NCBI RefSeq assembly: GCF_037042905.1
Contig: NW_026974140.1
Span: 10,540,001-10,604,000 of the forward strand
DNA from: Lytechinus pictus
Lineage: Eukaryota
Length of the DNA stretch: 64,000 bases
Reading direction: 5' to 3'
The notes under the pieces are model-generated. The model was given only the letters and a program-made list of their open reading frames with translations. It was not told the DNA's origin and made no database searches. A program made the translations under genes and the position numbers. How positions within the stretch are numbered: position 1 is the stretch's first letter; every line of letters starts with the position of its first letter. Positions 9,210 through 64,000 of the stretch are shown here, piece by piece.

Positions 9210-9770
9210 GTTCGATTTGATGGTATCATCAGAGATAGTAGTTTTGATGACATCCATATTCAAAGGTAGTGTGATGATAACATCAGTAATGCCAACCTTT
9301 GCAGCATGTACAGTCAGCCGGAGTCTATGATGATATCATTACAGAAGTCAGCCTTTAAACAAGTACTGACTACAGAAGTGCCTCTTGTGATATCATCAAA
9401 GAGGCCAACCCTACTCTGGCGTAGTCTCTCTGATATCATCAAAAGAGCCAACCCTACCCTTGAACTGCCTGGCATATCGTCTTTGATGATATCAAAAGAG
9501 GCCAACCCTATCGCTGTACAGCCTGGCGTAGTGTCTTTGATGATATAATCAGAGAGGCCAACCCTACCCTTGAACAGCTTGGCACAGTGTCTTTGATGAT
9601 ATCATCAGAGTTTAACTGGGACTTAATACAGTGCTTCAGAATATCTGATGATACAATCGTAGATATTTGTAATACACAGATGAACGAACCTGATACCATC
9701 ACATAGTTCAACTACATGTTGATATTGACGAAGTGCCTTTAATGGCGTCATCAGATCTTACCATTATGAA
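9210..9770 (-). repeat. Decayed tandem array (units about 45-60 bp) related to the RAB30 terminal codons
   Basis: Recurrent (t)tgatgatatc core, four ggccaaccct-type motifs, and copies of aaaggctgact / acatgctgcaaagg on the mRNA strand. Confidence 0.75.
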
Positions 9771-9819
9771 GTTGAAGAAACAAATTAACAAGAAGCATTT
9801 TACAACAGGATAGGAAGAG

Positions 9820-10061
9820 TCAGCCTTTACAGCATGTTGAGACTGAAGTAGTATCTTTGATGATATCTTCATGATCATCATGTCTGATCTCACCATTTCT
9901 TACATTATTGGTTAATTCAACTGCAATGTCCAGGAAGAGGCGATCCACATTGTCAGACTCTTTGGCTGATGTCTCCAGGAAACGCATCGAGTGGGAATCT
10001 GCAAAGCTTTGTCCATCTTCTTCGTTCACCTCTCGATCCTTGGCAAGGTCAATCTTATTAC
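9820..10061 (-). CDS. RAB30: RAB30 last coding exon
   Basis: aag|GT AAT AAG gives GNKID and ETSAK; ends TCCKG-TGA. Confidence 0.93.
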
Positions 10062-13000
10062 CTTCACATCAAAAAGAAAAAGAAAATAAATAATGACATG
10101 TTTTACCAGGGTCCTAGCAAGCCCTGCTTAACATGATAATGTTATTATCACCCAGCTTTAGTACGGCTACCTTGATCGGGCACTCAAGCATTCAAGGATT
10201 TTTCTTCCTACCGGGTACCCATTCACCTCACCTGGCGTGAGCACAGCACAATATGGGTACATTTCTTGCTGAAGGAAAAGACACCATGGCTTAGGATCAG
10301 ACCCACGTCCCTCAGATTGACAGTTGAGAGTCATTACCACTAGCCGCCATTTCATTACGCACATTAATACATTTAAAACACAGAGAAAGTCAGAGTCAGA
10401 GTTTTCAACACATTGAGTGGTATTCTGATAACTAAACCCAAGTTTGAACTCAAGACTAAACACACACTTCAGTTCCACATTTCTATGGAATACTACTTTT
10501 TTTTTTTTATTCAGACAAAGTGATTTTACCCCCAAAAGTTTAAATTGATTATATACTCATATGATGTTTGTACCTGGTGACATTGATGGAAAATTGCATT
10601 CCAGGTGGGTGTTTCATAAAGCTGTTTGTAAGATAGGAATGACTTTACGCTGACTGGTGATCCTTTCTTGTACTATGTGATATCCCTATGTAATCGAGTT
10701 ATGACCTAAGAACATGTTACAGCAGGCGCGTAGCCAGGGGGGGGGCGGTCGCCCCCCCCCCCCCAAACGTCCCCAAAAAGAAAAAAAAAAGGGAAAAAAG
10801 AGAGGAGAAAAGGAAAAGGGAAGGGAGGAAAGGGAAGAAAGGTAGCTTTTTTTTTTTTATTCTTTATTTTTTTTCTCAAAAGAGAAACTCCTTCACTCAT
10901 GCTCTAAATTTATATATGAATTTTGCTTCCGCGCTGCGAGCGGTTAAATGACAATATTGAAGTTCTCCATTGTTTTCCCCACCCTTTCTCTAACCCTGTT
11001 TTTCCACCTCAGCTATATGTGTTAATTGCCAGTTATATTTCAAATGTACACATTAGGGCATGGAATTTGAGTAAGATTAGGCCGAACTATATGAAGTTAT
11101 CTTTTTTTTTTTATTGATCGTGCAACTTCTGGTCAGGTCGGCTCCGGGCGGGTAAAATCTTTATATCAATTTCTGCCGTCACCTCCATAAAGTCAACTTT
11201 TCCCGCTTTTCAGCTCATTACTAAACAACCATAATTTGGGGGCAAACAGGTTCCTAATTTAAAAAGAGGAAGGGATAAAATTTGTGTCGTATTAAACAAA
11301 AAAGTAAATTTTTATCAAATTCTATTAAACTTCAGATCATTTCCCTGCACATTCATCTCCTGTCCTGTTTTGCGCTCTCAGTTTGAAATTTTGAATGACA
11401 CTTGAGTTTCTTTATAGTTCAAAATGAAGCGCTTCAGGATAAGTCAAAGAAATTAGGCATCCTTTTTTATATAATTTCAATAAATCACAGAAGTTTCAAC
11501 TTTTTGCGCACTATTTTCCTTGTAAGTTCAATAATCTTATAAAATCAATTGAATTAGAGCCGATGGGGTATTAGAGATATCTGCATTTGATGAAACGTCC
11601 GCCCTTTGAAATTTCAGAGTTTCATTGCTCTGCGCGGGGAGGAATATCTTCCTCCCGGCATATACACTTCTTCTCCTCTGTTTTGCGAGTTAAAGATATG
11701 CACTGTCGCTAAATTGTTTGTAATGAAATCTGATCTTTCCAAGGGAAATATTCAATGTATCTTTGAGAATACCCTTTTCTCGGGACCCTTTTCATGGCAA
11801 AAAATTGATAACACACTTTAGCTTCCGCGCTTCGCGCAGGTTTATTATTATTTCAATTTCCTCCATTGTATTCCTTTTTTGTGCGTTCACAATCACTTTT
11901 GAAAACAACGTTCATGAAAACAAGGTTAAAAATCACAATATAGTCAACTGAATTGGAGCTGATATAAGTACGAGAGACAAGAGAGACGGCTCCTTTTCAT
12001 TTTAATTTATGAAACACCAAAAGCTTCGCGCTTCGCACAGGAGGGGGAAACTCCCCCTCCCTGCACCCACCCACTAGAGAGCGCGCTCTGTAAGTGTTGG
12101 CACGCTTCGCATGCATTTACCGCCCCCTCCAAAATGAAATCCTGGCTACGCGGTTGTGTTACAGTCATGAGTAAAGCAACTTTATGAACAGCTTTATGAA
12201 ACACCCAACTAGAATATCATTTGCTATCACTGTTACATTCACCAAGTACATCCTATGGTGAAAATTTTATTAAACATTATTGTTATAAAATAAGAATAAC
12301 ACATTTGATGATATGAATAATTATATAATCAAAGTGGCCTGTAAAAGATCACCTGGTGACTGGTCTATCTAAACAATTGCTCTGAGAATACCTTGTTTTC
12401 ACCTCCTGAACTGTACATGTACATGTAGCAAGGTATTTCCTTTATTAAAGGTTACCATACATCAGGTCAAATGGAAGGGGGAAAATATCAGTTTATTTTT
12501 AACAATGGGGATAATGTCTGAGTTTTACATTCTCATCTCACTAATTTATAGCAGGTTAAGGCAGGTACTGAAATATAGTCATGCAAAATAACTCCCGCAC
12601 TTGACACTCTTGCTCATCCCACCTATCCCTACATCACACCTTTCCAATATTCTCATAATTCACAATCATGATGATCTCACATTGAGTCACGGTTCCCTGC
12701 CTAAAATCTCATGCAGCACTGGTCTTTGAATTCGGCATCTCTGGAAATTACAGAAGACTCTGCATAAGTTGAATAATCGCCAAACAGAACAGATTAAGCA
12801 GAACTAACATAAGATCTTCTTTTCACATTTCATCCAAGTTAAACAGATTTCCATGGTTCCAAGAGATTTTTGGCAGAGTCACCTGTATAGTGAGGCATAG
12901 ATTTTACAAATAATTTGAAAGGTGGTCTTAAAATCGGAAGAGCATTTTCTTCGGTTGCTCCACGTCATTGGAATTCTCTACCAATCCAATCTACTCATCT

Positions 13001-32600: not shown

Positions 32601-34194
32601 GAGGCATGGGGGGCTGTTTCACAAAGAGTTGATCTGAACGTTAAACCATCCATAATTGCAAATTAGGACATGGAATCAATACATCATCTACTATTGCATG
32701 TCCTATCAGCATGAATCTATCATTTGATGATGTGGTGATGTTGTACTATATATAGCACATACATATAACTAAACTGAATCATCAATCTGTTAAAATGCGA
32801 GAGTAAACACATTTTTCATCAATATCATCTAAATGATTTACAAGAAACGACCCAACAGAAGTGACATAGTATACATGTAGATAAAACAAAGAGAAATATA
32901 AGAAATAGGCCTAAGAAGAATATATATATCTTTGTTGTATGGGAATGATTCAGCCGATCCAAATGGTATTGCACACTACTTGTGATGGTAATTTTCTTTC
33001 CACTCATGTACATAGTTGCACTTGTTGGAACAGAATTTTCTCTCAAACAAATTTTTAGTCACACTCCCTCACCACACTAAACTATTAGTCTACAGGTACA
33101 GACCCTGATTGAATCTTTTTATATCAACAAGCAAATCTTGGAACAAGTCTTGCACATAAATGTCACAATTTAATTCATACCCTGGTAGGCTTGGAATTCA
33201 GAACATTTTGTTTTAATAAAAAATAAATAAAAGGGGTGGTGCCTTCATGCCACTCAACTATAAAATTTAAGATATGATGTAGTTGTAAGACTATATTCCA
33301 TTAAATTCATTTAAAGTGCTTAGAGCCTAATGGAAAAAACGCAGTATAAGTAATAATAATATTCATCAGAGAAAACAATTATCTTCAGATAATCATTAGG
33401 AATACAAATACAAAGTACTACATCATGACAATACTCACATTTTTTAAAATTATTGTATCAATGTAAAACTTCAAATTCAATGATTCATAAGATATATCAC
33501 TAGGACAATAATCAAGGTTTCAAATGAGTAGAGAGCTCTGAGCAATAACCTTTCTTTACCATTAATCATGAGGGTTTTAAATATCAGCATTAATTCACAA
33601 AGTGTAGACCTTACTTGTACATTCATTAGCCAAGCAACAAAAATAGAATGTAAACATGTCATGCAAAGCACGAATCATGTTTGACTCCTATTTAGACATT
33701 CCTTGTTTAAATCATAACTATTTCCACTTAATTTGCATAATATTGGAATAGAATCAAATTATCACAGGTGAACATGTATATTTTTCCAAGCTGTATGATT
33801 GAGACAAGATTCTATGATCAAATATCGAAGAAGTCTTCGATGCCCCAACCCCCACCACCCTACAAATGTAATAGGCCATTTCAGTGTAAGCAAAGGTTGT
33901 AGTTAACTGTATCATCATTGGTACTATAAGACGATATCATAGTTTAATAGACATTTATAGTGGGTTGTATTTGATAAGTAGATGGTCTGATGCTTAGACC
34001 ATCAGACACCATCAAAGCTACATGTAAGTCCACTTGGTCTACTACTGTTTGTTTGAATTAACCAATAATTGATCACTTGGTTGATCTGTAATTCAGTCTA
34101 TTTCCCAGATACCACAATATAATTTTGCACCAAGTGGGAATTCAATATTACAGTAAACAAAAATTGTAGTTAGCTGTCTTGTAGCTTGCATAAG

Positions 34195-34435
34195 TTAATA
34201 ATAGATATAACACAGTTCTTGTATAGCACAGATTACATTATGATATAAACTTCCTATGCACTTCCAAAAGACCAGGATATTATTAGCCTGGCTTTCGCAC
34301 CGCAGCCTTTTACAGTGCGGAAGCATTACTTTCAAGAAATAAATTTGTGCCAGGTTCTCATTTACCTCACCTGGGTTGAGTGCAGCACAGTGTGGATGAG
34401 TTTCTTGCCAAAGAAACTGATCCATGGCTGGGATT
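34195..34435 (-). mobile_element. SINE copy, same family
   Basis: acctcacctgggttgagtgcagcacagtgtggat core and tail. Confidence 0.7.
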
Positions 34436-34548
34436 CTTAGGAGGGTGTAAGAAAAGAAACTAGGCTAGTTCGTCAATGGGAGAGGATATCCTAGTTCAAC
34501 AGCTAAGCATATTATAGTTCAGTTTGTATAGATGGTTTGATTCAATGG

Positions 34549-37500
34549 GTAATTGTGGTAAGCCTAGGTCGTAGAATGTTGTATCATCACTTGTATAAAA
34601 TGACATCATAGTTTAATAGATCATTGTGGTAAGCCTAGGTCATAGAATGCTGTATCATCACTTGTATAAGATGACATCATAGTTTAATAGATCATTGTGG
34701 TAAGCCTAGGTTGTACTATGCTGTATTATCACTTGTACAAGATGACATCATAGTTTAATACATCATTGTGGTAAGCCTAGATTGTACTACGCTGTATTAT
34801 CATTTGTATAAGATCACATCATAGTTTAATACATCATTGTGGTAAGCCTAGGTTGTACTATGCTGTATCATCACTTGTACAAGATGACATCATAGTTTAA
34901 TAGATCATTGTGGTAAGCCTAGGTTGTACTACGCCGTATTATCACTTGTATAAGATCACATCATAGTTTAATAGATCATTGTGGTAAGCCTAGGTTGTAC
35001 TACACTGTATCATCACTTGTACAAGATGACATCATAGTTTAATAGATCATTGTGGTAAGCCTAGGTTGTACTACGCTGTATTATCACTTGTACAAGATGA
35101 CATCATAGTTTAATAGATCATTGTGGTAAGCCTAGGTTGTACTATGCTGTATTATCATTTGTACAAGATGACATCATAGTTTAATAGATCATTGTGGTAA
35201 GCCTAGGTTGTACTATGCTGTATTATCATTTGTACAAGATGACATCATAGTTTAATAGATCATTGTGGTAAGCCTAGGTTGTACTATGCTGTATTATCAT
35301 TTGTACAAGATGACATCATAGTTTAATAGATCATTGTGGTAAGCCTAGGTTGTACTATGCTGTATTATCATTTGTACAAGATGACATCATAGTTTAATAG
35401 ATCATTGTGGTAAGCCTAGGTTGTACTATGCTGTATTATCACTTGTACAAGATGACATCATAGTTTAATAGATCATTGTGGTAAGCCTAGGTTGTACTAT
35501 GCTGTATTATCATTTGTACAAGATGACATCATAGTTTAATAGATCATTGTGGTAAGCCTAGGTTGTACTATGCTGTATTATCATTTGTACAAGATGACAT
35601 CATAGTTTAATAGATCATTGTGGTAAGCCTAGGTTGTACTATGCTGTATTATCATTTGTACAAGATGACATCATAGTTTAATAGATCATTGTGGTAAGCC
35701 TAGGTTGTACTATGCTGTATTATCACTTGTACAAGATGACATCATAGTTTAATAGATCATTGTGGTAAGCCTAGGTTGTACTATGCTGTATTATTATTTG
35801 TACAAGATGACATCATAGTTTAATAGATCATTGTGGTAAGCCTAGGTTGTACTATGCTGTATTATCATTTGTTCAAGATGACATCATAGTTTAATAGATC
35901 ATTGTGGTAAGCCTAGGTTGTACTATGCTGTATCATCACTTGTACAAGATGACATCATAGTTTAATAGATCATTGTGGTAAGCCTAGGTTGTACTACGCT
36001 GTATCATCACTTGTATAAGATGACATCATAGTTTAATAGATCATTGTGGTAAGCCTAGGTTGTACTATGCTGTATCATCACTTGTACAAGATGACATCAT
36101 AGTTTAATAGATCATTGTGGTAAGCCTAGGTTGTACTATGCTGTATTATCATTTGTATAAGATCACATCATAGTTTAATAGATCATTGTGGTAAGCCTAG
36201 GTTGTACTATGCTGTATCATCACTTTTACAAGATGACATCATAGTTTAATAGATCATTGTGGTAAGCCTAGGTTGTACTATGCTGTATTATCATTTGTAT
36301 AAGATCACATCATAGTTTAATAGATCATTGTGGTAAGCCTAGGTTGTACTATGCTGTATCATCACTTGTACAAGATGACATCATAGTTTAATAGATCATT
36401 GTGGTAAGCCTAGGTTGTACTACGCTGTATTATCACTTGTATAAGATGACATCATAGTTTAATAGATCATTGTGGTAAGCCTTGGTTGTACTATGCTGTA
36501 TCATCACTTGTATAAGATCACATCATAGTTTAATAGATCATTGTGGTAAGCCTAGGTTGTACTATGCTGTATTATCACTTGTATAAGATGACATCATAGT
36601 TTAATAGATCATTGTGGTAAGCCTTGGTTGTACTATGCTGTATTATCATTTGTATAAGATCACATCATAGTTTAATAGATCATTGTGGTAAGCCTAGGTT
36701 GTACTATGCTGTATTATCACTTGTATAAGATGACATCATAGTTTAATAGATCATTGTGGTAAGCCTAGGTTGTACTACGCTGTATTATCACTTGTATAAG
36801 ATGACATCATAGTTTAATAGATCATTGTGGTAAGCCTTGGTTGTACTATGCTGTATCATCACTTGTATAAGATCACATCATAGTTTAATAGATCATTGTG
36901 GTAAGCCTAGGTTGTACTATGCTGTATTATCACTTGTATAAGATGACATCATAGTTTAATAGATCATTGTGGTAAGCCTAGGTTGTACTATGCTGTATTA
37001 TCACTTGTATAAGATGACATCATAGTTTAATAGATCATTGTGGTAAGCCTTGGTTGTACTATGCTGTATCATCACTTGTATAAGATCACATCATAGTTTA
37101 ATAGATCATTGTGGTAAGCCTAGGTTGTACTATGCTGTATTATCATTTGTACAAGATGACATCATAGTTTAATAGATCATTGTGGTAAGCCTTGGTTGTA
37201 CTATGCTGTATCATCACTTGTACAAGATGACATCATCGTTTAATAGATCATTGTGGTAAGCCTAGGTTGTACTATGCTGTATCATCAATTGTACAAGATG
37301 ACATCATAGTTTAATAGATCAATGTGGTAAGCCTAGGTTGTACTACGCTGTATTATCATTTGTACAAGATGACATCATAGTTTAATAGATCATTGTGGTA
37401 AGCCTAGGTTGTACTATGCTGTATCATCACTTGTACAAGATGACATCATAGTTTAATAGATCATTGTGGTAAGCCTAGGTTGTACTATGCTGTATTATCA

Positions 37501-37660
37501 TTTGTACAAGATGACATCATAGTTTAATAGATCATTGTGGTAAGCCTAGGTTGTACTATGCTGTATTATCACTTGTACAAGATGACATCATAGTTTAATA
37601 GATCATTGTGGTAAGCCTAGGTTGTAGAATGCTGTATCATCACTATATAACTAAGATTAG
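34549..37660. repeat. 71-bp tandem minisatellite, about 44 copies, directly downstream of the UFSP2 stop
   Basis: Unit gatcattgtggtaagcctaggttgtactatgctgtattatcacttgtacaagatgacatcatagtttaata. The tcattgtgg anchor at 34621 and 37603 is exactly 42 x 71 bp apart. Confidence 0.98.
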
Positions 37661-37666
37661 ATATTC

Positions 37667-37753
37667 TCATAGTTCAATTGGTCTTTGTGGTAAGCATAGG
37701 TTGTAATACGCTGTCTTGTCCCAGAAATCAATGCCTTTCCAACCGCACCATCC
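37667..37753 (-). CDS. UFSP2: UFSP2 last coding exon ([28 protein letters not shown])
   Basis: catcag|GGA ... TGA; conserved UFSP2 C-terminus. Confidence 0.96.
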
Positions 37754-40700
37754 CTGATGAAAAAATGAAAATATAAATAAATGCTTTTTATTTCTTGACC
37801 ATTTCATAATCATAGATTATCAAACACTTCCTAAATTTAATAAAATGCATTCTCAAAATCTATACTTGGAGCTAATATCATATCCTTGAACTTTGTGTGA
37901 CAAATAGTAGGAAAAATCATTAAAACTATTGATGAAGATTTGAGGGAAATCAAATCTTCAGTATATCAATAGACAAATTATTTCACATTCGCTCTTGAAA
38001 GAAAGAAAAATAAGTCATCACGAACCATGAAAACTTTGAAATTTCTGCACTTTATATCACAAAACATATATGGCAGCTGCTCGTACATGACGTCACATAT
38101 CAAAAATTTAAAATTCTAATAACTTTCTTCATATTTGATGGATTCTGGTCAAACCTTCATCAATATTTTCTATCAATTTTTATTCTATTTTTTACAACTA
38201 AATTTTTGTCTGGGTGAACTTCCCCTCTAATCCTTTGAACCCGAAAAGACGGAATACAAGCTTCACCATAAACGTGCATATACCCGAAAAGCAAGAATAC
38301 TGGCTTCAAGTCATGTGATTTGAAAAGCAAGGGTTTTAGATATCAGGTGACATTTAAAAATGACATAATTTTTGATGATATTCAGTCGATAATTTCAGTT
38401 TATGATTTTGTCGACAATTGGGTTTCATTTATGAGATTTTAGCATAAAAAATGACCAAATTATACTACCCTACCAAGGAGGCTTGTTCGATAATACATAG
38501 CGAGTTGTATACGGACTATGCGAAAGCTATTGTTGAATTTTACTTCCATCAAAGCAGTGATTTTGAGACAAAATTTGTGATTATCATTAGTACGGGAAGC
38601 TAAACAACATCAGCCGGGCCAGGCCGGGTATCAGCGGAGTAAGGTGCCGCTGACATGGCTGGGCTCAAATCATGACAATACTAGATCATTTATTTCAAAT
38701 GTCATGTATTCCTTCATTTTGCCAATAATCTTTATATCTGTAAATAATTCAGGGTGAGGGTCACGACCGTCCAAATTAATTCAGGGTTCAAAGGGTTAAA
38801 CCAGAGTTAAGAATAATGGTTTATACCTTGTCTTGTATAGTCTTGATATCCTCACCACCTGTATAATGAGGATCTAAAATGAGAAACTTGAGATCTCCGG
38901 AATTCTCGCTGAAATCCACTCCTAAAATAGTGTGGGCAAGAACTCCACCTCCTGAAGGGAAATGAGATTGAAGTAAAAATTAATAACATGATATTAATAG
39001 ATGATACTTGAAGGTTTGCATGGTGGGATGAACAATTACGCAAGTAGTAGCTTTCAAACTCCTTCTAGTTTACTCCGAAAGATACTCCATTTCCTAACTT
39101 CCACATTCTCGCCTCTCCATTGCAATTCCACTCCACCTCTATTCACTTTCATCTCAGTCCTTCCCAGGACTTTGCACATGATGTACCATAAACAATTAAA
39201 TAATGATAGTAACAACGACAACAATTACAATAATAATTATTATGATTATAATAATAATCATCATTATCATTGTTATAATGACAACATAAAGGGTAATTAA
39301 TAGGGATGTTTCATAGTGTGGGTGGCATATAATATCCTGTTGTATTTTTACTACAACAGGATAAGAAGAAAACGGAAAGAAGAAAAATATTCCTTGTTGA
39401 ATCTAAGGTCCTCATTTTGTGTTCTTCGATGACATGCATAAAATAAATGATAAAGCAAAATTTGGTAAATAATGAAAATCTCTGATAAATGCAAATTTTG
39501 ATTTTCCAGGCACTGAAGAACTCAGATAAATCTTGGCAAACACAAACTAATACTATGCATCGGTTTGATCAGCAGATATACCTCTGATGTACTGTATTGT
39601 TTATTTGCTGTGATATTCATGGCCGTAACTAAATTTTTCTTTCTTTTTTATCGAGGGGGGAACGTGAAAAATTTCATTTTATGTGAAATTCTATAAATGA
39701 ATTCTTTGTTCTTCTTGAACTCCACATTCTTCTTGGAATTTTCTGTTTTCCATATTGTGGAAAACTGGGAATTTTAGTTGAATTGCATGTTGATTAGATT
39801 TCAATTGGAGTTTATCATACCTATCATTACTGGAGTACCTTGAGTCTGGAAGTGAGCTGCTAATTCCCTTCCTTTCATAGCCATCTCCTCACCGTTTGGA
39901 ATAAACATTATCTTAGATGTGATCTGTTCCAATAAACATAAGTTTTAAAGAGAAAAGACCGGTATATCACTACTGAAGAAAATCACTTGATGTGTCTGAT
40001 GATCTATTAAATGCATTATTAGAATCATTCTATATTTACTTCTAAAATGGCTGTAGTTAATATAATTTATATCATGTGATTCATCTGATGCATGGGAGAG
40101 CTGGCTGCAAATGACATCACAAATATAAAGTCTTAAAAATCCATAACTCTCTTTGATTTTCTTTGCCAAATCTTCATTTATATATATCATCTGTTTTCTT
40201 GTTTTTATCAAAATCACCTTTAGGTAAAAATAAACCCTTCTAAAAAATGAAGCCACAATGCCACAATAAAGGGATACCAGGGGCCATTTCAAACTAGCTG
40301 TTAAAACATTATGCGTGACTATACCAACAACTTTGGAGCATTCATCCACATTTTTGTCTGACAACTTGTCAGATATGACGACTTTCCTTGATATTGATTG
40401 GCTGAGACTTTGGTAACTGTCAGATAAAACAGAATGTGTAAAGAATTTTTTTTGATAAGTCCTTTCATGAAATGTTCCGCGGTGACCCTTTCTTGTGCTA
40501 AAGGAGATACCCTAGATTGTCTGATTTGATATGATGGGAGTGCATTTCAATCATAATCAAATTCTTGAATATTGAATTACCGAGGTAATAATGAGGATCT
40601 TACCCCTAGGAGTTGATTTAAGACTGTGCTGACTTCTATTGATCCAATCCATTGCCTTGATCCAACAAACTTGGCTTGCTTGTCACCAACATCAACTAGT

Positions 40701-43700
40701 GCTTGCTGAATCTCCTTATGACTCGGAATGGAGCAATCCACATAACCCTATAAATGAGATACATGCTGTATTATAAAACTGTTTCCTCATTTCCGGAAGA
40801 ATGGCCATATAAATTACTTTTAAAATACAATGTTTTACAACCCATTTTTTATGCTTTTTCATTAAACTTGTGTCCCTTCCTATCCTTCTCCTTCCTTCAT
40901 TCTTTGTGTTCTTCATCTTTAATACTTCTCCTTCTTTCTTCTTGTTTTTCTCTTCCTTCTCCTCTTTCTCGATCCTCCTTCTCTTCCTCTTTCCTTTGTT
41001 GTCTTTCTTCCTCTTCTCCTCCTCTTCCTCCTTGTTCTTCTTTTCCATTATTCTCCTTATTCCTCCTCCAACTTTCCTTCCTATTTTCATTCAGTATCAT
41101 TTCTCACACTTTCCCTCTAATATGCAAATGTTTATTTGCTCATGCAGCCCGTTTTATGGAGCAGACTCCAAATTTCCCTGAAAACAATTGATTCTGTTGA
41201 AAAATTCAAAAAACTTAAAACCTACTTATTCAAATTGTACCTTAACTCAACAAAGTGAACTCACCAACACATCATTTTCTTCCCTATATTTTCATAAGCA
41301 AATAGAGACATATTTGTTCTGTGTTATGTGCTCTATTATTATTATTATTATCATTATTATTATTATAAAAATACAAAAATTAGATAATAGAACCTACTGA
41401 TTACCTGTAATTTGAACCATGAGCAGAGAGTTTGTAATGACCTGTATGCACATCCCCATTGATCATCATTAAACCTATCTTGCATATAATGATGATATGT
41501 ATAATTGCCTTGCACGAGAGATTGCTTCCCTCCTGGTACTGTCACAGAGATACAAGAGAACAAAATATATTCAAAGTCATCTGGGCCTTATATTTTATGG
41601 AGACTGGATTATTAAAGGGGAATCAAACCTTGGTCATAAAATGTGTGAGAGAGGGTGAAAATAAGAAAATACAGAATGGTGAAAGTTTGAAATAAATCAG
41701 ACAAGGGACAAGAAAAATATGGTTGTTTTAATATTGAGATCCCTAAGGCTATATAGATTTCAAATTGGCAACTGGGTAAGTAAATTATGACAAGGGGCAA
41801 GGACAACTTTTCCATAGGCCATGTACTTCAGGGATTTGCGGTTTTCTCCTATCCCACTGAGGCAGTAATTATTATATACCATATTTTCTAATGTCCTCAT
41901 GAAGAAAAATTACAATTTGAAGTAAAACCTGAAAAAACATTTTGTATGTTGGAGTAAATAAAGAGAAGTCATTGCCTTACATGTACATCACTATGACATC
42001 ATCAGTGCGGCTAATTTGAAGTATCAATAGGTATAGTGATTACCAATTTCTACAACTTAAAAATTCGTATTTCTTCCTTATTGTTTGTCCGATACAATTC
42101 ACCATCTATCTGAGTTTTCTTTTTGCTCTACAAACAACTTTTTAGTTATGTTGGGTTCACCTCTAACTGTTTACCCCATACTTTGTTTAAAGCACTGGAA
42201 AGACTGTAATAGAGACTTCTTTGAAGGACAGCAAATATAGGTGTAGCACCTGTGAGAAATACTTTGGTCAAACATGCTTAGCCTCAGACAAAGGCCAGAT
42301 AAAGTGAGGTAATGACTTTACTACAAGCCAATGGTTGGAGGGAGCTTCCAGTCATTGGCATTCATTCATTATGTTTATTACTCATATATTCCATTCTACT
42401 CTTGGTTATTGACAGCAACTTTTGTAAGAGTCAAATTTCCAATCAACATGTTTCTATTATCAATTCTTTCTACTGCAAATATGATGTCTCAATAGTAGAG
42501 GACAATATTTCGTACACTCATGTCTACAATAAATCTTCAGAATACACTATTATTTTCAGTACCAAAGCACCATGACTAAGTAATGTCGCGCCTGGAATCA
42601 AGCTGCATATGGACATTACTAACAGGTTCCCGAAGACAGAGGTTCAAGCCCTGATTCACATCTCTCAGATGGTAACATCAAGGGTCAGTCAGATTATGTG
42701 TTAACCCTAAAAGGACTGCCCCCCCCCTCAACGATTCATGCGATATTTCCAAAATGCAAAAAGATAGCGCCGCAAAATTTATTGACTTATTTCTTTAAAG
42801 TCTCGCACAACTTTTGAGACCAAATTCGTTCGCGACATACGGGTACAGCATCGCGAAGCGGCGTGACTTTTTACAAGACAATGTTATGCCGTACGAAGTC
42901 TATGGGAGATGAAATTTCTAAAAGGGTGATTATTTTCTGTTTTAGTTGGTCTCCTTAATTAATTTAGGGTTTAATTTAGTTGTTAAATAGTCTGTAATAA
43001 TTTCCATTAAAAAAAAAAGAAAAACAAAAGATGAAAAAACAGGGAAATACATAAGCTTTCACAATTTTTGTTCGTGGAAACCTTTAAAGTAGATTATACA
43101 GATGATATCTGGAAAAAAAGAAGAAAATTTGAAGCAAAATTGGGTGTTAAATATGCAAATAATATTTTTGCGGGGATAAATTTGTATATTTTAGTCATAA
43201 TAAATAAAAAATTCTTATTTTCAGAACTTTTTTTCATAGTGGCTTGTAGTTTATGTGGTAAGAATGTGCGGGCCAAATTTCGGCGTGAATGCGCGAACGG
43301 CGGCTGAGATTAGAAGGGGGGCCATCATGGCCCCACCCCCCAGTCCTCAATACATCTCACATGGCCCAATCCTTTTAGGGTTAAATTACAGATACAACGT
43401 TGGCATTTCAGCATGACTCTCAAGTCATACTTAACTCTATGTGAACCAAGTCTTCCAGAGGGTCCTGCATAACATACCCTCCTCCACTTTGATATACAGT
43501 GCACCTCGCTAGATGGTGAGATTCCATTATACTCAGCCGGGGATCTAACCTACAACCTCCTGTTCATGAGGCTCTAACACTGGGCCACCAAGCCCAAACA
43601 AAAATGCACACACAAACTGAAATGCAAATCATGCAACATAAATATAATGCTATCAATTATTAATCATATATAAAATATGGAAGGCACTTCAGTCACCTAC

Positions 43701-46700: not shown

Positions 46701-49700
46701 CGCTCAGATATTGAAATAATAAATAATAATATGGGTTTTGTATAGCGCAAGTATCCACCTTGTTAGATGCTCAAGGTGCTCCTATATTAGCCCAGCTAAA
46801 CTAGTCTACCATTTCCGGTGCTCACAGCTCTTTAAAGGTCAAGTCCACCCCAGGGAAATGTTGATTTGAATAAATAGAGAAAAATCAAACTAGCATAACG
46901 CTGAAAATTTCATCAAAATCGGATGTAAAACAAGAAAGTTATGGCATTTTAAAGTTTCGCTTATTTTTCACAAACCAGAGATATGCACAACTCAGTGACA
47001 TACAAATGAGTCAGTCGGTGATGTCCATTACTCACTATTTCTTTTGTTTTTTTCATTTTTTGAATTATACAATATTTCATTTTTTTCCAAATTTGACAAT
47101 TGGACCAACTTGACTGAACCATATAGTATTCAACAATGCCAATTCCACATGTTCAGGGAGGAATTAATCGTTGTTTCACTCGATAATGAGGAGAAAATTA
47201 GAATATTTCATTTTTCATATAAAAAACAAAAGAAATAGTGAGTGGATGATGTCATCAGTCTCCTCATTTGCATACCGACCAGGATGTGCATATAACTGTT
47301 TTGTGAAATTAAGTGAAAATTTAAAATGTCGTAACTTTCTTACTTTACATCCGATTTTTTTAAAGGAAATTTTCAGTGTTGTGCTTGTTGGATTTTTTTC
47401 TTTTTATTCAAATCAACATTTTCCTGGGGTGGACTTGTCCTTTAAGAAATTACTTCCTGCCAATGCCCATTTACCTTTATAATACCTGGGTTGAGTGCAG
47501 CACAATACGGTACTAATAGTTACATTTATATAGCGCTTGATACATTCTGTTTCTAGGCGCTTTACATAGCATTTATTATTACCCCTTTCATCAGATCCTG
47601 GCATGCCTACACAAAATGTATACACTTTCTCCACTCCCTGGGGAGCACCATATTCCACATGGTGATAAATGCAATAACATGTCCTTTTTCTATCATACAC
47701 GTAATACAAGGAGGAACATATATAGGGACAGTGATTTTCCGTTTCAAAAAATTGCCTTTTCCGTTTCAGAAAATCTCAAATTCCGTTTCAGCATGTCAGA
47801 AAACGGAAATTCTGTTTCCCCATAGACTTTGTACACACGGAAAAGTGACATTTCCGTTTACACATTGAATAGCAAAATTTGTATCTGCTACTGTACCAAC
47901 AACACAATAGAATCCGTTCGAATCGGATCTATGCAGGTGCATAAAATATATTTACGAACCCATTTAGCATGCATACATCCTCACCTTTCACATTATTAGC
48001 ATTATTTCACGGTGAAATGATATTTTATCGATAATTTTGGGGTTTTTTGGACATCGTTATCATCAGTCAACGGCTTTTGCCAATCCACCATCTTGGATTT
48101 TAAGACCACGATATCGTGCTGTTACATTTTCAAACGTAGAGGGCAGCAACACACGACCGTGTAGTTGAACGATATGTGTGCATGTACTATGTGAAGCCCA
48201 ACCCGGCCGGCCGGGTGCGGGGTACAATCGAGTGTGCTGATGTCGAGTGCAGTCACGATGTGTGAATTGTCATGATAGTAGCGAAGTGAGATCGTGTTTT
48301 CTGGGGTTTTGTGGCCATTTAATATTCTCATTTTGTTGTGATTTTGGAGTAATATCTGTTGCTATTCTGTGTATTTTGAGGGAAAATACGTTTTCCGTGA
48401 TTTTCCGTTTGAAATGCCACTTTCCGTTTCAAAAGGCCCTTTCCGTGAATTCCGTCCATTTTCCGCGATCGCGGAAAATCACTGTCCCTACATATATCTC
48501 ACATATCTCATAAATGTTTTGATCATTGAAAATCAAGAATTTAAGAAGACAGCTTGGGAGAGAAATTTCTTTGTATTGTCGTAAACGGGAGAAAGAGAGA
48601 ATGAATATCACAAGAGATGCAAAACTTACAATCATTGTAGAAAACAACAGGGATGTGTGTGTCTTCTTCTGTTGTTTGTGCAGAGCCTGTCTTGAAAAGA
48701 ATCTTCACATCAAGAACCTGTTCACACACACAAATATAAACAAATCTTAACATATTTCAAACTAATAAGTATAGTACAATAGCTATTCTTTGAATATTTT
48801 AAGAACAGATTCAAATAAACAACTAAGATTATGTCCTGCTTTATACAAGGAATCTGCTTATTAAAGAGGAAGTTCACCCTGACCAAAAGTTTGTTGTAAA
48901 ATAGCAAAAAAATGATTTAAAAATTGGTGAAGGCTTGAGAAACATCCAACAAAGATAAAGAAAGTTTTTAGAATTTTAGGTTTTTGATTTGTGACGTATG
49001 TCATATACAAGCAGCTGCCCCATATGTTATGTAGTGTCAAATGCATAAATTTCAATTTTGTTAATGGTTCATGATGACTATTTTATTTTTTCTTTTTCAG
49101 GAGTGGATGTGAAATAATTTGTCTATTGATATACTGAAGTTGAAATAAAAAATCAGTCTCAATTTTCAGAGAAAATGACATTTGATGAATTTTTACCATA
49201 GATATGTAAAAAAGCTGCGCGCATATGACATCACAAATCCAATAATTGGAATTCTAGTGGTCAACTTCTTTAATCTTTGATAGATTTTCTAAAAACCTTA
49301 GCCAATATTTTTTAATTATTTTTTCTTCTACCAGTACTTTTACAATGAACTTTTTGCCAGGGTGAACTTCCCATTAAGGGTATTCCTCCATTTTTATGTT
49401 TATATGTACTGTGCCATTACTGTATTACATTTAAAATGTACGCTGGTATTCTAGAGATGAAAAAATAAAATTGAAATTAAGATTCTCAACGAAGAACCTA
49501 ATTACAGTGACAGCTCTGATAAATTTTCCTGTCAAAAATCTATTCACACAAACAATATAAACTGATCTTCATGTAATTTTACACAAAATGAATATATCAT
49601 TCACATTTCATTACTATACCTGACCATCTAGTTTAGTTTTTTTCTTCTTCTTCTTTTCACCAGCCACTCCAAACCCATCATCTTCTTCATCATCCTGAAG

Positions 49701-61700: not shown

Positions 61701-63224
61701 GTTTTCATTACTTTTTCCAAGTTAATAAGCTACTGTGGTTAACTTAATTCAATGTAACTTTTTAAAAGAAAAAAAGTAAAAAATTTCTCTAGTAAAGTTC
61801 CTTTTCGCAAAGGGTGATTAACTTGCGGTTTCCCCTTTATTTTTCAGCTTATTTTACTCATCCATCATTCACATTTTCTTTCCAAGTTGGTGCACTGATT
61901 CCCCTTGATCAATCATGAAACAAACTTAATTCTTATGTTTCTTGTCCTTCCGAACATGCCCAAGTTTATGATTTGATGAACCTGGATATGATTAGGGAAA
62001 TGTCCCTGCTCAGATCCTAGATGTAAAACTGGGGGTTAATAATATGCCATAGACAATGCAAAAATGCATCAATGCTGCAAACTTGGAACATTTGGGCTAA
62101 AATGCACCACTGTTAGTGTTAGGTAACAGTGTTTATACAAAACCGCTAAAGCGTGACCAATGCAATTTTCATAGAAGCTAGATCATGAAACGAGCTTTCT
62201 ACTCATGAACATTTATTTGAGAATTGCGGCTCATTGTACTTTTGTAGCAGATCAATGCAGCCGGAAAGGCGTAACGGAAAATATACTAACATTAAAGTTA
62301 TGCTTTGGCAGTAGAGGCGCACGGCCAATATTGGAGACTGTCTCCAATGTGGGAGATTATCTCCAATATCAGAGACTTTTGTAAAGAATTTGGGTATCCA
62401 ATTTCAGAGACAGTCTCCAGTTTTGGAGTCCAATTTCCTTTGTTTACATTTGCTGCAAAAGGATTAACTTGGCGGCAAATAAAAATGTGATAAGCAGATT
62501 CCTCATGAAAAATTACCCCTTTTCACCGTCTACTTTAAAAATTCACCGTCTACTTTTGTTTTGATAAGGATTTTTGTTGTCAATCACACACAAAACAAAT
62601 GGGCTTCTGACCTCAGTGAGACAAAATTTTGGGTGGAAAAAATCATGCTTTTGTTGGTGTTGTTTCTTTTGTCCTTTTGCAAAGCAAGTCTCCAATGTGG
62701 GAGATTGTCTCCCCTATTGGAGAGAGTCTCCCATATTGGCCGTGCGCCTCTAGGCTCTACTGTTTGGAGCGGCTTTCTTTGACTTTGTTCTTTTTCTCAA
62801 TAAGGCAAAAATGCTATGCCTTGCAACAGAAATTTGAGTGTAAAAATGGGGGTCCCCTCCGCGGCACATACCCACTATGCATTATATACTGAGTGCCCCC
62901 CCCCCCCCCCCGTTTTGGATCTGTGGAAACACTTATAGGCCTAGGCCTACACCATTTGCTATGGGTGGGACTGGAGACTCGGTTGAGCTGAAACAGCACG
63001 CAGTGCATACTAATTACTACATACGATTGTGCTCGGTCATTGTCATTGTAAAGCTGTTTTTTTTCCAAAAGACAAATCATCACAAGCCGGATTTCAACAT
63101 CCTCTCAAATTTTAACATCAGATCTGCAAGACTACAAAAATACCTTCAGAGCTCCAGAAAAGGCTTCCACCGAAATCACGTCCATGACCATGTCCATGTC
63201 ACCAGCTGGTATATTTGACTGCAT
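37667..63224 (-). CDS. UFSP2: UFM1-specific protease 2 (UfSP2/ODR-8-like, peptidase family C78), spliced gene of about 629 aa including the tentative first exon
   Basis: Thirteen exons from 52421 to 37667 join in frame at GT-AG boundaries. Motifs include [20 protein letters not shown] (catalytic Cys), [32 protein letters not shown] (Asp-Pro-His box) and GWCGWKG..FW...[11 protein letters not shown]. The first exon is less certain. Confidence 0.92.
38231..38795. mobile_element. Degenerate piggyBac-like MITE
   Basis: cctttgaaccc ... gggttcaaaggg|ttaa. Confidence 0.5.
38827..38951 (-). CDS. UFSP2: UFSP2 exon with DPH box ([11 protein letters not shown]...[10 protein letters not shown])
   Basis: 125 nt with GT-AG boundaries. 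Confidence 0.96.
39821..39923 (-). CDS. UFSP2: UFSP2 exon (ITSKIMF...[11 protein letters not shown])
   Basis: 103 nt with GT-AG boundaries. Confidence 0.95.
40604..40747 (-). CDS. UFSP2: UFSP2 exon ([18 protein letters not shown]...GSRQWIGS...NQLLG)
   Basis: 144 nt with GT-AG boundaries. Confidence 0.95.
40875..41085. repeat. Polypyrimidine (CT-rich) low-complexity tract
   Basis: Almost exclusively C/T; similar tracts at about 23290-23390 and a purine-rich one at 63775-64000. Confidence 0.85.
41405..41538 (-). CDS. UFSP2: UFSP2 exon with catalytic Cys (GWGC-type motif, here [11 protein letters not shown])
   Basis: 134 nt with GT-AG boundaries; [37 protein letters not shown]. Confidence 0.96.
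41616..42165. mobile_element. TTAA-type MITE; an inverted-orientation relative lies at about 16610-17180
   Basis: Starts ttaaaggggaatcaaaccttggtcataa; internal sequence matches the reverse complement of 16987-17180. Confidence 0.6.
42705..43380. mobile_element. piggyBac-like MITE
   Basis: ttaa|ccctaaaagga ... tccttttaggg|ttaa. Confidence 0.75.
43771..43917 (-). CDS. UFSP2: UFSP2 exon ([16 protein letters not shown]...YLMNTH)
   Basis: 147 nt with GT-AG boundaries; LH..F.LP.DRP motif. Confidence 0.92.
44463..44565 (-). CDS. UFSP2: UFSP2 exon ([12 protein letters not shown]...LTVVYPSG)
   Basis: 103 nt with GT-AG boundaries; PE..HF and T..YPSG motifs. Confidence 0.9.
44722..46001. mobile_element. 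hAT-like non-autonomous element with a decayed Zn-finger transposase fragment
   Basis: TIR caggcctgaga / tctcaggcctg, perfect 8-bp TSD atctatat, internal ORF 45179-45382(-) containing [22 protein letters not shown]. Confidence 0.85.
46492..46649 (-). CDS. UFSP2: UFSP2 exon (MNLPLDVVV...QLRAMEICI)
   Basis: 158 nt with GT-AG boundaries; resembles MTLPVDAV...QLTDMEKCI of vertebrate UFSP2. Confidence 0.9.
46715..47510 (-). mobile_element. SINE copy split by the 46836-47441 MITE
   Basis: Tail portion at 46715-46831; the core resumes after 47445 (cctgggttgagtgcagcaca). Confidence 0.6.
46836..47441. mobile_element. TTAA-flanked MITE (Kolobok-like AG termini) inserted in a SINE
   Basis: ttaa|aggtcaagtccaccccagg ... 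cctggggtggacttgtcct|ttaa. Confidence 0.8.
47724..48489. mobile_element. hAT-like MITE
   Basis: TIR (t)agggacagtgattttccg / cggaaaatcactgtccct(a); flanking direct repeat acatatat; subterminal ttccgt repeats. Confidence 0.8.
48630..48717 (-). CDS. UFSP2: UFSP2 exon (VLDVKILF...PVVFYND)
   Basis: 88 nt, cag|GTT ... T|gtaagt; phases bridge the neighbouring exons. Confidence 0.85.
48865..49373. mobile_element. TTAA-flanked MITE; related partial copies at about 37900-38230 and 44000-44140
   Basis: ttaa|agaggaagttcaccctg ... cagggtgaacttccca|ttaa. Confidence 0.75.
49620..49882 (-). CDS. UFSP2: UFSP2 exon (ELPNVF...[11 protein letters not shown])
   Basis: 263 nt with GT-AG boundaries; acidic then Lys-rich stretch as in UFSP2. 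Confidence 0.87.
50030..50300 (-). mobile_element. tRNA-derived SINE copy
   Basis: B-box gggttcgaatccc, A-box gtggctcagtgg, shared core, L2-like tail. Confidence 0.8.
50398..50611 (-). CDS. UFSP2: UFSP2 exon ([12 protein letters not shown]...[19 protein letters not shown])
   Basis: 214 nt with GT-AG boundaries; LIFRIR aligns with the ILFRIR near the vertebrate UFSP2 N-terminus. Confidence 0.87.
51885..51976 (-). CDS. UFSP2: UFSP2 exon (VNVCGLFLP...EIAK)
   Basis: tttcag|GG ... AAG|gtgag; 92 nt; phases consistent. Confidence 0.8.
52271..52421 (-). CDS. UFSP2: UFSP2 exon (QIQSF...INSYLPAG)
   Basis: tttatag|CAA ... GCA G|gtgagt; open 151 nt; phase fits the next exon. Confidence 0.8.
56691..57232. 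mobile_element. Second, shorter copy of the HINE-like element
   Basis: Same ends, aacaagtggaa ... gcggcgcctatagtctc ... gagacaaaaa, with fewer internal units. Confidence 0.7.
57447..59203. mobile_element. Tc1/mariner-like non-autonomous element with long TIRs (about 400 bp)
   Basis: TA|cagtgcgtccc ... gggacgcactg|TA; the arms align over several hundred bp; an extra partial arm copy lies at about 58440-58670. Confidence 0.85.
60346..61478 (-). mobile_element. 5'-truncated non-LTR retrotransposon (LINE): ORF2 C-terminus 60697-61476 plus 3' UTR
   Basis: Uninterrupted 259-aa ORF with post-RT motifs (YGELGR, INFWAR, YRIFK..F..E.YL, NHRLPI..GR) and a CxxC..GDEFH....C Zn knuckle; the 3' end has a short GC hairpin followed by aataaa. 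Clade (RTE-X or CR1-group) not resolved. Confidence 0.88.
62312..62752. mobile_element. MITE with TIR tagaggcgcacggccaatat
   Basis: Inverted ends tagaggcgcacggccaatat / atattggccgtgcgcctcta with ggagac/gtctcc subterminal repeats; no clear TSD. Confidence 0.7.
63144..63224 (-). CDS. UFSP2: Candidate UFSP2 first coding exon ([27 protein letters not shown])
   Basis: Several in-frame ATGs after an upstream TGA, ending AAG|gtattt in phase 0 as required by the exon at 52421. No homology support; implies a 10.7-kb intron. Confidence 0.45.
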
Positions 63225-64000
63225 GCATCATAGACATCTCTACTATATATACTCTAAAGATCTATGGACTGCACTGCAGCATGCACTGCGCATAAGCTAG
63301 CCGATTTTTTCTTTCTTAAACCTCCTTTTTCTTTTTGTGTTTTTCGTCACATGCACATAACAGTACAAAAACGATAATCATAATTGATGATGATAATAAT
63401 ATATTGAACTTATTCTGCGCCAAATTCACTCTGTAGAAATGGGCTTTTCACAAAGAAATGATAAATAAGGGAAATTAAGAATCGAAATTATTTTGCCTTT
63501 AGGTGTTCTTTGTTTGAAGAAGTTTATAGGATGAAATATGAATGGACAAATGATCCCCCCTCCCCGTTTTGGAAACTGGGGTAATGAGAGAATTGGAAGT
63601 GGAGGAACATGAGGACATTGAAGGGGTGAAGCTTTTAATTAATAATAAATAATATCCAAGTCCTTTGGAAGCGCATAGAGACATTATTCATAATTGTGAT
63701 ATGCGCTATACAAGAACTGTTTATTATTATTAAGGAAATTATTGATTATGATGCATGAATTTGAAGTTCAAAGAAGAGGAAAAGGAAAAAAAATACAGGA
63801 GTAAGGAAAGATAAATATGGAGGAAAAAGAGGAGTGATCGAGGGAGAGAAAGATCGAACAAATAAAGGCGAACAACATGGAAAGGGAGGAGTAGGAGTTG
63901 GGAGACAAATTTATGAAGAAAACAAAGAGAGAGAGAGAGAGGAAGAATAAAACAAAAAGCAGAGAAATTAAGAGGAAGAATTCAACAAGAAGTAAAAGCA

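What the first reader, a model, noticed from the sequence alone, without database searches (positions are those of the whole stretch)
34549..37714. 3.1-kb minisatellite made from UFSP2's own last 15 codons and stop codon
Seen in the sequence: on the mRNA strand the CDS ends ACA GCG TAT TAC AAC CTA TGC TTA CCA CAA AGA CCA ATT GAA CTA TGA, and the 71-bp unit contains ACA GCA TAG TAC AAC CTA GGC TTA CCA CAA TGA TCT ATT AAA CTA TGA (41/48 identical). The coding end is therefore effectively the first member of an array of about 44 copies starting right after the stop. The copies carry two new stops (TAG, TGA) in the former reading frame. Inference: a satellite born from a stop-codon-spanning duplication, probably within the 3' UTR. 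It could multiply RNA-binding or small-RNA sites, be a length-polymorphic VNTR, or exchange sequence with the conserved C-terminus by gene conversion.
Basis: partly seen in the sequence, partly recalled or inferred. Interest (0 to 1): 0.78.

Follow-up and report, generated by a model that had tools for sequence, protein, structure and literature searches.

The report
UFSP2 coding-tail minisatellite in 3'UTR
The last 15 codons, the stop codon and the first 31 bases of the 3' untranslated region of a sea-urchin UFSP2 gene have been copied head to tail about 44 times just behind the gene; the copies are transcribed as part of the messenger's tail, and this is a large example of a tolerated repeat type this scan has met repeatedly in this genome, with no sign of a special function.

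Summary
On the minus strand, 34552-37714 is a 71-bp x 44.4 tandem array with 95% matches and no indels. Its unit is homologous over its whole length to the 79 bp formed by the last 48 nt of the UFSP2 CDS plus the first 31 nt after the stop (41/48 ungapped). The C-terminus matches mouse UfSP2 residue for residue, so the coding copy is the parent.

New here:
- An RNA contig runs without a difference from the last exon through the stop into unit 1.
- Stranded RNA reads on the array are all in the UFSP2 sense.
- Array-to-exon depth in one RNA run is about 45, against 44 assembled copies.
- A second species has the same stop-spacer-unit junction and only 5-24 copy-equivalents of the unit. The array is therefore older than that species split and is not an abundant dispersed satellite there.
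- The edge units keep older states, and a decayed tail split by a transposon runs to 33869.

No frame is open, no Rfam family matches and the RNA fold is unremarkable. The poly(A) site, length polymorphism, gene conversion and any regulatory role remain untested. The scan found the same kind on other DNA of this genome (CEP162, SHCBP1, RGP1, RAB30). Verdict: a real, transcribed 3'UTR minisatellite and a new member of a known kind.

The parts
38827..38951 (-). Penultimate coding exon of UFSP2 (Peptidase_C78 domain, ...[19 protein letters not shown])
   Evidence: Pfam PF07910 E 1e-9. AG acceptor and GT donor read. RNA contig depth of 20.9 here, against 0 in the unique part of the intron.
37667..37753 (-). 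Coding part of the last UFSP2 exon ([28 protein letters not shown], stop TGA at 37669-37667)
   Evidence: Aligns to mouse UfSP2 3oqc residues 454-479 at E 1.1e-11. Covered without a difference by X5 contig record 9.
37667..37714 (-). Parent segment ('unit 0', coding part): the last 15 codons plus the stop
   Evidence: 41/48 identical to the consensus unit and 40/48 to unit 1. Found as the 45th match of the unit core.
37636..37666 (-). 31-nt post-stop spacer, the start of the 3' UTR and the parent of the 23-nt non-coding part of the unit
   Evidence: Global alignment gives 20/23 with 8 nt of gaps; 8 of 2000 shuffles reach the score. It lies inside the exact-match RNA contig.
34583..37635 (-). 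43 units of exactly 71 bp. Units 25-36 are nearly identical, units 6-22 show a weak two-unit periodicity, and unit 1 and unit 43 carry the older TTC state.
   Evidence: The first 3.3 units (37400-37635), the only part laid, carry stranded RNA reads and RNA contigs.
34512..34582 (-). Unit 44, diverged (31/71 differences). It keeps the old frame open (TTFYDLGLPQLPIE) and the CDS-like ATTGAA.
34446..34511 (-). Degenerate further unit (decayed tail of the array)
   Evidence: Aligns to the relic units beyond the insertion.
34010..34445 (.). Dispersed repeat (transposon-like) inserted in the decayed tail
   Evidence: Partial copies at 74-81% identity at 5739-5844, 63648-63733, 10211-10291 and 47441-47504.
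33869..34009 (-). Relic of about 1.5-2 old units beyond the insertion
   Evidence: blastn of the unit gives 76% identity over 89 nt at E 3e-11. Alignments.

Best explanation
This is a locus-specific minisatellite inside the 3' untranslated region of UFSP2.

Origin (inferred). A 79-bp segment made of the last 15 codons, the stop codon and the first 31 nt of the 3' UTR was duplicated in tandem, by replication slippage or unequal exchange. An 8-nt shorter copy of 71 bp was then amplified.

Maintenance (inferred). Unequal exchange and conversion among units keep the core homogeneous and let it expand. The edge units are left out of that exchange and keep older states. The far end has decayed and has taken up a transposon.

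Consequences for the protein. The true stop codon comes first, and every unit has stops in all frames, so the protein is unchanged.

Transcription (shown). The array is transcribed in the sense direction as part of the mRNA, giving a 3' UTR of at least about 3.2 kb.

Function (inferred). It is most likely a tolerated passenger with no function of its own.

Age (shown). It predates the split from a second species, organism B, which is probably a congener.
For: The array and its register with the coding end are shown.

Homology covers the whole unit, including the non-coding part.

The parent C-terminus is conserved with mouse UfSP2, and the gene is confirmed by Peptidase_C78 hits.

RNA evidence:
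- X5 contig record 9 (1926 nt, depth 20.9) matches 37597-37752 with 0 differences, and the upstream exon has the same depth.
- The unique intron stretch 37778-37885 has depth 0 in X1, X5 and X21.
- X21 raw reads on the array reach depth 10-21, all with the first mate on the plus strand, and the spacer has depth 1.3.
- X5 depth is 946 at 37485 against 20.9 on the exon, about 45 copies. The variant with A at unit position 64 has depth 401.5, about 19 copies. The assembly holds 44 copies in all and 16 of that variant.

Organism B DNA:
- Contig record 16 spans 37568-37949, which covers the exon, the stop, the spacer and unit 1.
- Unit-like words sum to 200-980 against about 42 for single-copy sequence.

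Age structure:
- The near-identical core contrasts with diverged edges, and a TTC state is shared by unit 1, units 43-44 and organism B's CDS.
- The decayed tail and the relic are split by a dispersed repeat.

No sign of another role: no open frame, no Rfam family, and an RNA fold z-score of -0.42.

The same kind was noted at other genes of this genome (unchecked notes).
Against: No read or contig was shown to cross the whole array, and the poly(A) site was not found. The reads tool could be used only once and was laid on 37400-39000, so the far junction was not examined.

Exon depth in the raw-read run X21 was 0. This may be low sampling or the tool's filter for conserved genes, so the raw reads alone do not tie the array RNA to UFSP2.

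In run X1 the array-to-exon depth ratio is about 90-150, above the 44 expected. That could mean a longer array in that animal, 3' bias, separate or more stable array RNA, or other expressed copies.

No DNA run of organism A was laid, so copy number and locus specificity in this genome rest on the assembly, on the RNA ratio, and on the absence of other copies in this 64-kb window.

Neutrality is inferred from the lack of signals, not demonstrated.
Confidence: 0.78

Rival explanations
1. The array is a working 3'UTR module. It would multiply a short element about 44-fold: the ATTAAA poly(A)-signal-like hexamer present once per unit, or a protein or small-RNA binding site. That could tune mRNA 3' end choice, stability, localisation or translation of UFSP2.
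For: Each unit carries ATTAAA where the coding copy has ATTGAA, and the next AATAAA on this strand lies about 2 kb beyond the array. The array is kept in two species and is transcribed in the sense direction. The array-to-exon RNA ratio differs between runs: about 45 in X5 and about 90-150 in X1.
Against: No read ends or poly(A) loose ends were reported in the first three units (tables 6 and 7). In X5 the depth fits the whole array being present at the same level as the exons, so most transcripts there are not cut early. There is no RNA structure signal and no Rfam hit. Homogeneity with decayed edges is what concerted evolution gives without selection. Similar arrays sit behind several unrelated genes of this genome.
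Confidence: 0.1
2. The array and the coding end exchange sequence by gene conversion, so the array speeds or steers change in the UFSP2 C-terminus. This could hold in addition to the main reading.
For: Between organisms A and B, five differences were listed in the 48 nt that are homologous to the unit: GCG/GAG, TAT/TTC (two adjacent bases), CAA/CAG and CCA/CCT. No listed difference falls in the other 39 coding nt of the exon. At each of the five sites, one species carries the unit's state.
Against: The same pattern is expected if the unit simply keeps the ancestral states. Only 12 of the 21 differences of that contig were listed, so the clustering is not established. The longest exact runs shared by the CDS end and the unit are about 11 nt. 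There is no outgroup to give polarity. Conversion from a core unit would bring in a stop codon and would be selected against.
Confidence: 0.1
3. The 71-bp unit belongs to a dispersed satellite or a transposon-borne array that happens to lie, or was captured, next to UFSP2.
For: The genome is rich in repeats and minisatellites. The X1 RNA ratio above 44 could reflect other expressed copies.
Against: There is no other copy in the 64-kb window apart from the adjoining relic. The array is in register with, and homologous along its whole unit to, the gene's own end and post-stop sequence. In organism B DNA the unit has only 5-24 copy-equivalents, whereas the truly dispersed repeat in the intron reaches roughly 30-1600 copy-equivalents in the same table. 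A sequence look-up in the scan's notes was blank.
Confidence: 0.03
4. The array is real but its length of 44 units is an assembly artefact.
For: Near-identical units in the core (0.5-0.8 differences per 71 nt) are hard to assemble. No long read was examined.
Against: RNA depth in X5 gives about 45 copy-equivalents in total and about 19 for one variant, close to the 44 and 16 assembled. There are no N runs in the window. The units carry an ordered pattern of variants and are not one unit repeated.
Confidence: 0.06

Closest known systems
[quoted passage not shown]
   Same: A gene-feature boundary with its signal is copied head to tail next to the authentic copy. The authentic copy at the edge of the array is the one used. 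Units fall in the same size range (10-160 bp). Concerted evolution acts in the core while the boundary units are excluded from homogenisation, which matches here.
   Different: The boundary copied here is the stop codon, where the CDS meets the 3' UTR inside one exon. It is not a splice junction, so no decoy splice sites are made and the copies end up in the mature mRNA instead of an intron. With 44 units it is also much longer than the 3-6 units reported for the globin cases.
Stop-codon-spanning 3'UTR repeats noted by this scan in the same genome (CEP162, SHCBP1, RGP1, RAB30, two unnamed genes; notes s1-311635, s1-327708, s1-324914, s1-320201, s1-294537, s1-320132)
   Same: The same construction: the last codons plus the stop are re-copied in tandem into the transcribed 3' UTR. 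The follow-ups that exist judged them tolerated minisatellites. The RAB30-like case is in this very window, and I saw it myself.
   Different: This one has by far the most copies (44, against 1-12) and the youngest, most homogeneous core. The notes on the others are unchecked AI notes.
Ordinary 3'UTR minisatellites (VNTRs) such as the 40-bp repeat in the human dopamine transporter gene SLC6A3 (from my own knowledge, not tested here)
   Same: A tandem array of tens-of-bp units inside a 3' UTR, transcribed with the mRNA.
   Different: Those are not known to derive from the gene's own coding end. Length polymorphism, the defining use of a VNTR, was not measured here.

Membership tests
Minisatellite | Head-to-tail copies of a unit of about 10-100 bp forming an array of 0.5 kb to tens of kb | tested here: met
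   Period 71, 44.4 copies, 3163 bp, 95% matches, no indels. Spacing is exactly 71.
Minisatellite | Single locus, not a high-copy dispersed or centromeric satellite | tested here: inconclusive
   There is no other copy in the window. Organism B DNA holds 5-24 copy-equivalents, against roughly 30-1600 for the intronic dispersed repeat. The genome of organism A itself could not be searched.
Minisatellite (VNTR) | Length or sequence polymorphism among individuals | tested here: inconclusive
   Only hints. In X21, 22 of 22 reads carry G at unit position 64 where the assembly's unit 2 has A, while X5 and X1 hold the A variant. The array-to-exon ratio differs between X5 and X1. No lengths were measured.
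Mirage minisatellite (exon-intron boundary repeats) | The repeat unit spans an exon-intron boundary and carries its splice signal (PMC3087553) | tested here: not met
   The unit spans the stop codon inside the last exon. The acceptor of that exon is at 37754-37755, outside the repeated segment, which starts at 37714.
Mirage minisatellite (exon-intron boundary repeats) | The authentic copy sits at the array edge and is the one used; the core is homogenised and the boundary units are excluded | tested here: met
   The real stop is the first copy. The core units differ by 0.5-0.8 per 71 nt, and the edge units differ by 2-31 and share older states.
3'UTR element of UFSP2 mRNA | Transcribed on the gene's strand, contiguous with the spliced coding exons | tested here: met
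   The X5 contig is exact across the exon, the stop, the spacer and unit 1, and the intron is absent from it. X21 reads are strand-specific. The depth ratio is about 45. Continuity through the whole array and the poly(A) site were not shown.
UFSP2 (Ufm1-specific protease 2, Peptidase_C78) | C78 protease domain with the conserved C-terminal ...GWCGWK...[10 protein letters not shown] motif | tested here: met
   Five exon pieces hit PF07910 in order along the profile, with E-values from 9e-16 to 0.02; the three strongest pass Pfam's cut-off. The last 26 residues align to mouse UfSP2 3oqc at E 1e-11. The N-terminal part of the gene was not assembled.

The most novel reading that the evidence does not exclude
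The array is not neutral. It would act as a dosage-like 3'UTR device: 44 ATTAAA-bearing units giving graded 3' end choice, or a reservoir of binding sites, with abundance relative to the coding part that varies between samples. It would also trade sequence with the coding end, driving the unusually changeable last 15 codons of an otherwise conserved protease (Ala/Glu and Tyr/Phe differences between two close species).
Probability: 0.08. Interest if true: 0.55.

Novelty: new member of a known kind. Interest (0 to 1): 0.3.

Why it matters
As it stands, this is a clean and unusually large example of how a minisatellite is born from unique sequence. The parent copy is still in place and still functional. 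The whole unit can be traced to it. The edge units and a sister species preserve intermediate states.

That makes it a good teaching or model case for dating repeat birth and concerted evolution. It also adds to a pattern in this urchin genome of tandem arrays that copy gene-feature boundaries, both splice sites and stop codons.

The practical consequences are modest. The UFSP2 3' UTR is at least 3.2 kb of repeat, which will confuse short-read quantification, 3' end annotation and primer design. It is also a likely length-polymorphic marker. No effect on the UFSP2 protein is expected, because the true stop codon comes first.

Tried and rejected
1. Outgroup comparison. A word search of the protein collection with the last-exon ORF returned only two short fragments, and these are not from urchins (C-termini ...QRPKSI and ...QRPKTI). 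Their contigs (L001, L002) were fetched but not read, compared or used. Their origin is unknown, and I left them aside. Full-length urchin UFSP2 could not be queried, because that would have required typing a long spliced protein.

2. Locus specificity in this genome. The scan's sequence look-up was blank. No tool here searches a eukaryotic assembly.

3. Coding potential. All six frames of the unit have stops, and the longest ORFs are 34-40 aa on the antisense strand. I rejected this reading.

4. Known RNA family or structured RNA. There was no Rfam match at E up to 1, and three units fold no better than shuffles (z -0.42). I rejected this reading.

5. The bacterial-type promoter and terminator scan is irrelevant to an animal genome and was ignored.

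6. Literature on stop-codon-spanning minisatellites. Two full-text searches gave nothing specific beyond the 'mirage' concept.

7. The reads tool. I laid only 37400-39000. The far junction and the whole-array span were therefore not examined.

8. Clustering of A/B differences in the repeat-homologous 48 nt. It is not a valid test, because only 12 of the contig's 21 differences were listed.
Full report
**What is there**

Tandem Repeats Finder reports one dominant array in the window: 34552-37714, period 71, 44.4 copies, 95% matches, no indels, score 5547. A 26-nt core of the unit occurs 45 times on the minus strand with up to 3 mismatches, against none in 100 shuffles. Forty-four of these are spaced exactly 71 bp. 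The 45th lies 79 bp upstream of unit 1, inside a coding exon. The window has no N.

**The gene**

Minus-strand exon pieces lie at 41587-41366, 40747-40580, 39944-39804, 38951-38827 and 37753-37667. They hit Pfam Peptidase_C78 in order along the profile (splice sites read). The last exon encodes [28 protein letters not shown] followed by a stop. Its first 26 residues align to mouse Ufm1-specific protease 2 (PDB 3oqc, residues 454-479) at E 1.1e-11, with [11 protein letters not shown] identical. The coding copy is therefore ancestral, and the repeat derives from it, not the reverse.

**Homology of the unit to the gene's end**

- The 48-nt CDS end (37714-37667) matches the consensus unit at 41/48 ungapped positions. 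Outside the array, no other 48-mer in the window on either strand reaches 30/48.
- Homology does not stop at the stop codon. The 31 nt that follow it align to the remaining 23 nt of the unit at 20/23 with 8 nt of gaps, and only 8 of 2000 shuffles reach that score.
- The parent segment is thus 79 bp, made of 15 codons, the stop and the first 31 nt of the 3' UTR. The amplified unit is a 71-bp derivative of it.
All six frames of the unit carry stops.

**Internal history of the array**

- Units 25-36 differ from each other by 0.5-0.8 positions per 71, which marks a young expansion.
- Units 6-22 show a weak two-unit periodicity.
- The edges are older. Unit 1 and units 43-44 have TTC where the core has TAG.
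- Unit 44 (34582-34512) differs from the consensus at 31 positions. It keeps the old frame open (TTFYDLGLPQLPIE) and keeps the CDS-like ATTGAA where the core has ATTAAA.
- Beyond unit 44 lies one more degenerate unit, down to about 34446.
- Next comes a 436-bp stretch (34010-34445) with partial copies at four other places in the window, so it is a dispersed repeat.
- Last come about 1.5-2 relic units at 34009-33869 (76% identity over 89 nt, E 3e-11).

The array therefore once reached at least to 33869. Its tail has decayed and has been hit by a transposon. A homogenised core with excluded, older boundary units is the standard signature of tandem-repeat turnover, as described for the amphioxus 'mirage' repeats (PMC3087553).

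**Transcription**

I therefore laid four runs on 37400-39000, which covers the penultimate exon, the intron, the last exon, the spacer and the first 3.3 units.

- Contig continuity. In run X5 a 1926-nt contig (depth 20.9) matches 37597-37752 with no difference. That covers the last exon, the stop, the spacer and 39 nt of unit 1. The penultimate exon has the same depth, and the unique part of the intron (37778-37885) has depth 0 in X1, X5 and X21. X1 and X5 therefore behave as RNA runs, and the spliced mRNA runs into the array. The contig presumably ends at 37597 because the assembly graph branches in the repeat.
- Strand. In the raw, stranded, rRNA-depleted run X21, the array bins have depth 10-21, all with the first mate on the plus strand and none on the minus strand. 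For the usual library type this means minus-strand RNA, which is the UFSP2 sense. The unique spacer bin has depth 1.3. That is what the array depth predicts if reads from 44 units pile onto 3.3 units.
- Stoichiometry. In X5 the summed depth at 37485 is 946, about 45 times the exon depth. The contigs carrying A at unit position 64 (place 37501) sum to 401.5, about 19 exon-equivalents. The assembly has 44 units, 16 of them with that variant. The tool warns that summed contig depth is a poor measure. Even so, the agreement suggests that in X5 the whole array is present in RNA at the same level as the exons.
- Ends. No read ends or poly(A) loose ends were reported in the first three units.

Caveats on the RNA evidence:
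- X21 shows depth 0 on both exons. This may be low sampling (6% of the run was read) or the tool's filter for conserved genes.
- In X1 the array-to-exon ratio is about 90-150, above the 44 expected.
- No molecule was shown to span the array, and the poly(A) site is unknown.
- ATTAAA occurs once per unit. The next AATAAA on this strand is at 32515.

**A second species**

Runs of organism B hold 5-9% of the sampled words.

- A 394-nt DNA contig of X9 (depth 41.6) spans 37568-37949 with 21 differences and 5 gaps. It covers the last exon, the stop, the spacer and nearly all of unit 1.
- Unit-like words sum to 200-980, which is 5-24 single-copy equivalents. The dispersed repeat in the intron reaches about 1,400-67,000 in the same table, roughly 30-1600 copy-equivalents.
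- The array therefore exists at the same place in organism B and predates the split. In B the unit is not an abundant dispersed satellite.
- B's coding end reads [15 protein letters not shown]. Its TTC and CCT states match the units, while A's C at position 5 and A at position 30 match the units. This fits a unit copied from the common ancestor's coding end.
- B's unit 1 carries two states (37632 C>T and 37623 T>C) that in A are found in the last unit. This again points to old unit types surviving at the edges.

**Species identity**

Run organisms are coded. Earlier notes of this scan call the genome Lytechinus pictus. I did not verify that.

**What it most likely is and does**

- Shown: a real array; its derivation from the gene's own end; sense transcription contiguous with the spliced mRNA; presence in a second species.
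- Inferred: birth by tandem duplication (slippage or unequal exchange); maintenance by unequal exchange and conversion; no function of its own.
- Nothing suggests a product or a structure. There is no open frame, no Rfam hit at E up to 1, and folding no better than shuffles (z -0.42).
- The protein is unaffected, because the authentic stop comes first.

**Rival readings**

- A regulatory role is possible through 44 ATTAAA hexamers or other short sites. It has no positive evidence beyond conservation in two close species and a variable RNA ratio.
- Gene conversion with the coding end is suggested only by five A/B differences listed inside the 48 homologous nt and none listed in the other 39 coding nt. 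That list is incomplete and there is no outgroup.
- An origin as a dispersed satellite is unlikely, and so is an assembly artefact.

**Comparison with what is known**

The closest described class is the 'mirage' minisatellite, which spans exon-intron boundaries. This array behaves like one. It fails the defining feature, however, because it spans the stop codon within one exon and carries no splice signal.

The scan has already noted the same stop-spanning construction at CEP162, SHCBP1, RGP1, two unnamed genes and the RAB30-like gene of this same window. I saw the RAB30-like case myself: the last exon ends ...[17 protein letters not shown], and DIIKDT-like segments recur in the 3' flank.

This finding is therefore a new and unusually large member of a known kind. 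Two full-text searches found no paper specifically on stop-codon-spanning minisatellites.

The two non-urchin fragments and their contigs were not examined further.

Noticed in passing
window 9317-10068, minus strand: A RAB30-like last exon (10068-9823, ending ...[17 protein letters not shown], then a stop) is followed in its 3' flank by several decayed copies of the same C-terminal segment (DIIKDT-like pieces in ORFs at 9711-9511 and 9601-9317). This is a second stop-spanning repeat in the same window, as note s1-320201 says.
   Followed up: partly
window 37940-38800 (last intron of UFSP2): A high-copy dispersed repeat. Summed contig depth in organism B DNA is about 1,400-67,000 against about 42 for single-copy sequence. 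It is also abundant on both strands in RNA runs, with many contigs diverging at its edges.
   Followed up: no
window 34010-34445: A transposon-like insertion in the decayed tail of the array. Partial copies at 74-81% identity lie at 5739-5844, 63648-63733, 10211-10291 and 47441-47504. The family was not identified.
   Followed up: partly
window 37501 (unit 2, unit position 64): All 22 raw RNA reads of run X21 carry G (minus strand) where the assembly has A. RNA contigs of X5 and X1 hold the A variant at about 42% and 25% of local depth. This is probably individual variation in array composition.
   Followed up: no
window 1706-2252 and 8329-9125: Two further tandem arrays: 36/74-bp units x 15 (87% matches) and 153-192-bp units x 2-3.5 (78-92% matches). 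The second lies just downstream of the RAB30-like repeats.
   Followed up: no
window 62325-62377 and 62687-62739: Two short 19-bp tandem runs whose consensus units look like reverse complements of each other by eye (not checked with a tool), about 360 bp apart. This may be the repeated arms of a small foldback or MITE-like element.
   Followed up: no
window 40716-41191, both strands (UFSP2 intron): A purine-rich low-complexity stretch gives long Lys/Glu/Arg-rich ORFs on both strands (124 and 145 aa). It looks like simple sequence, not a gene.
   Followed up: no
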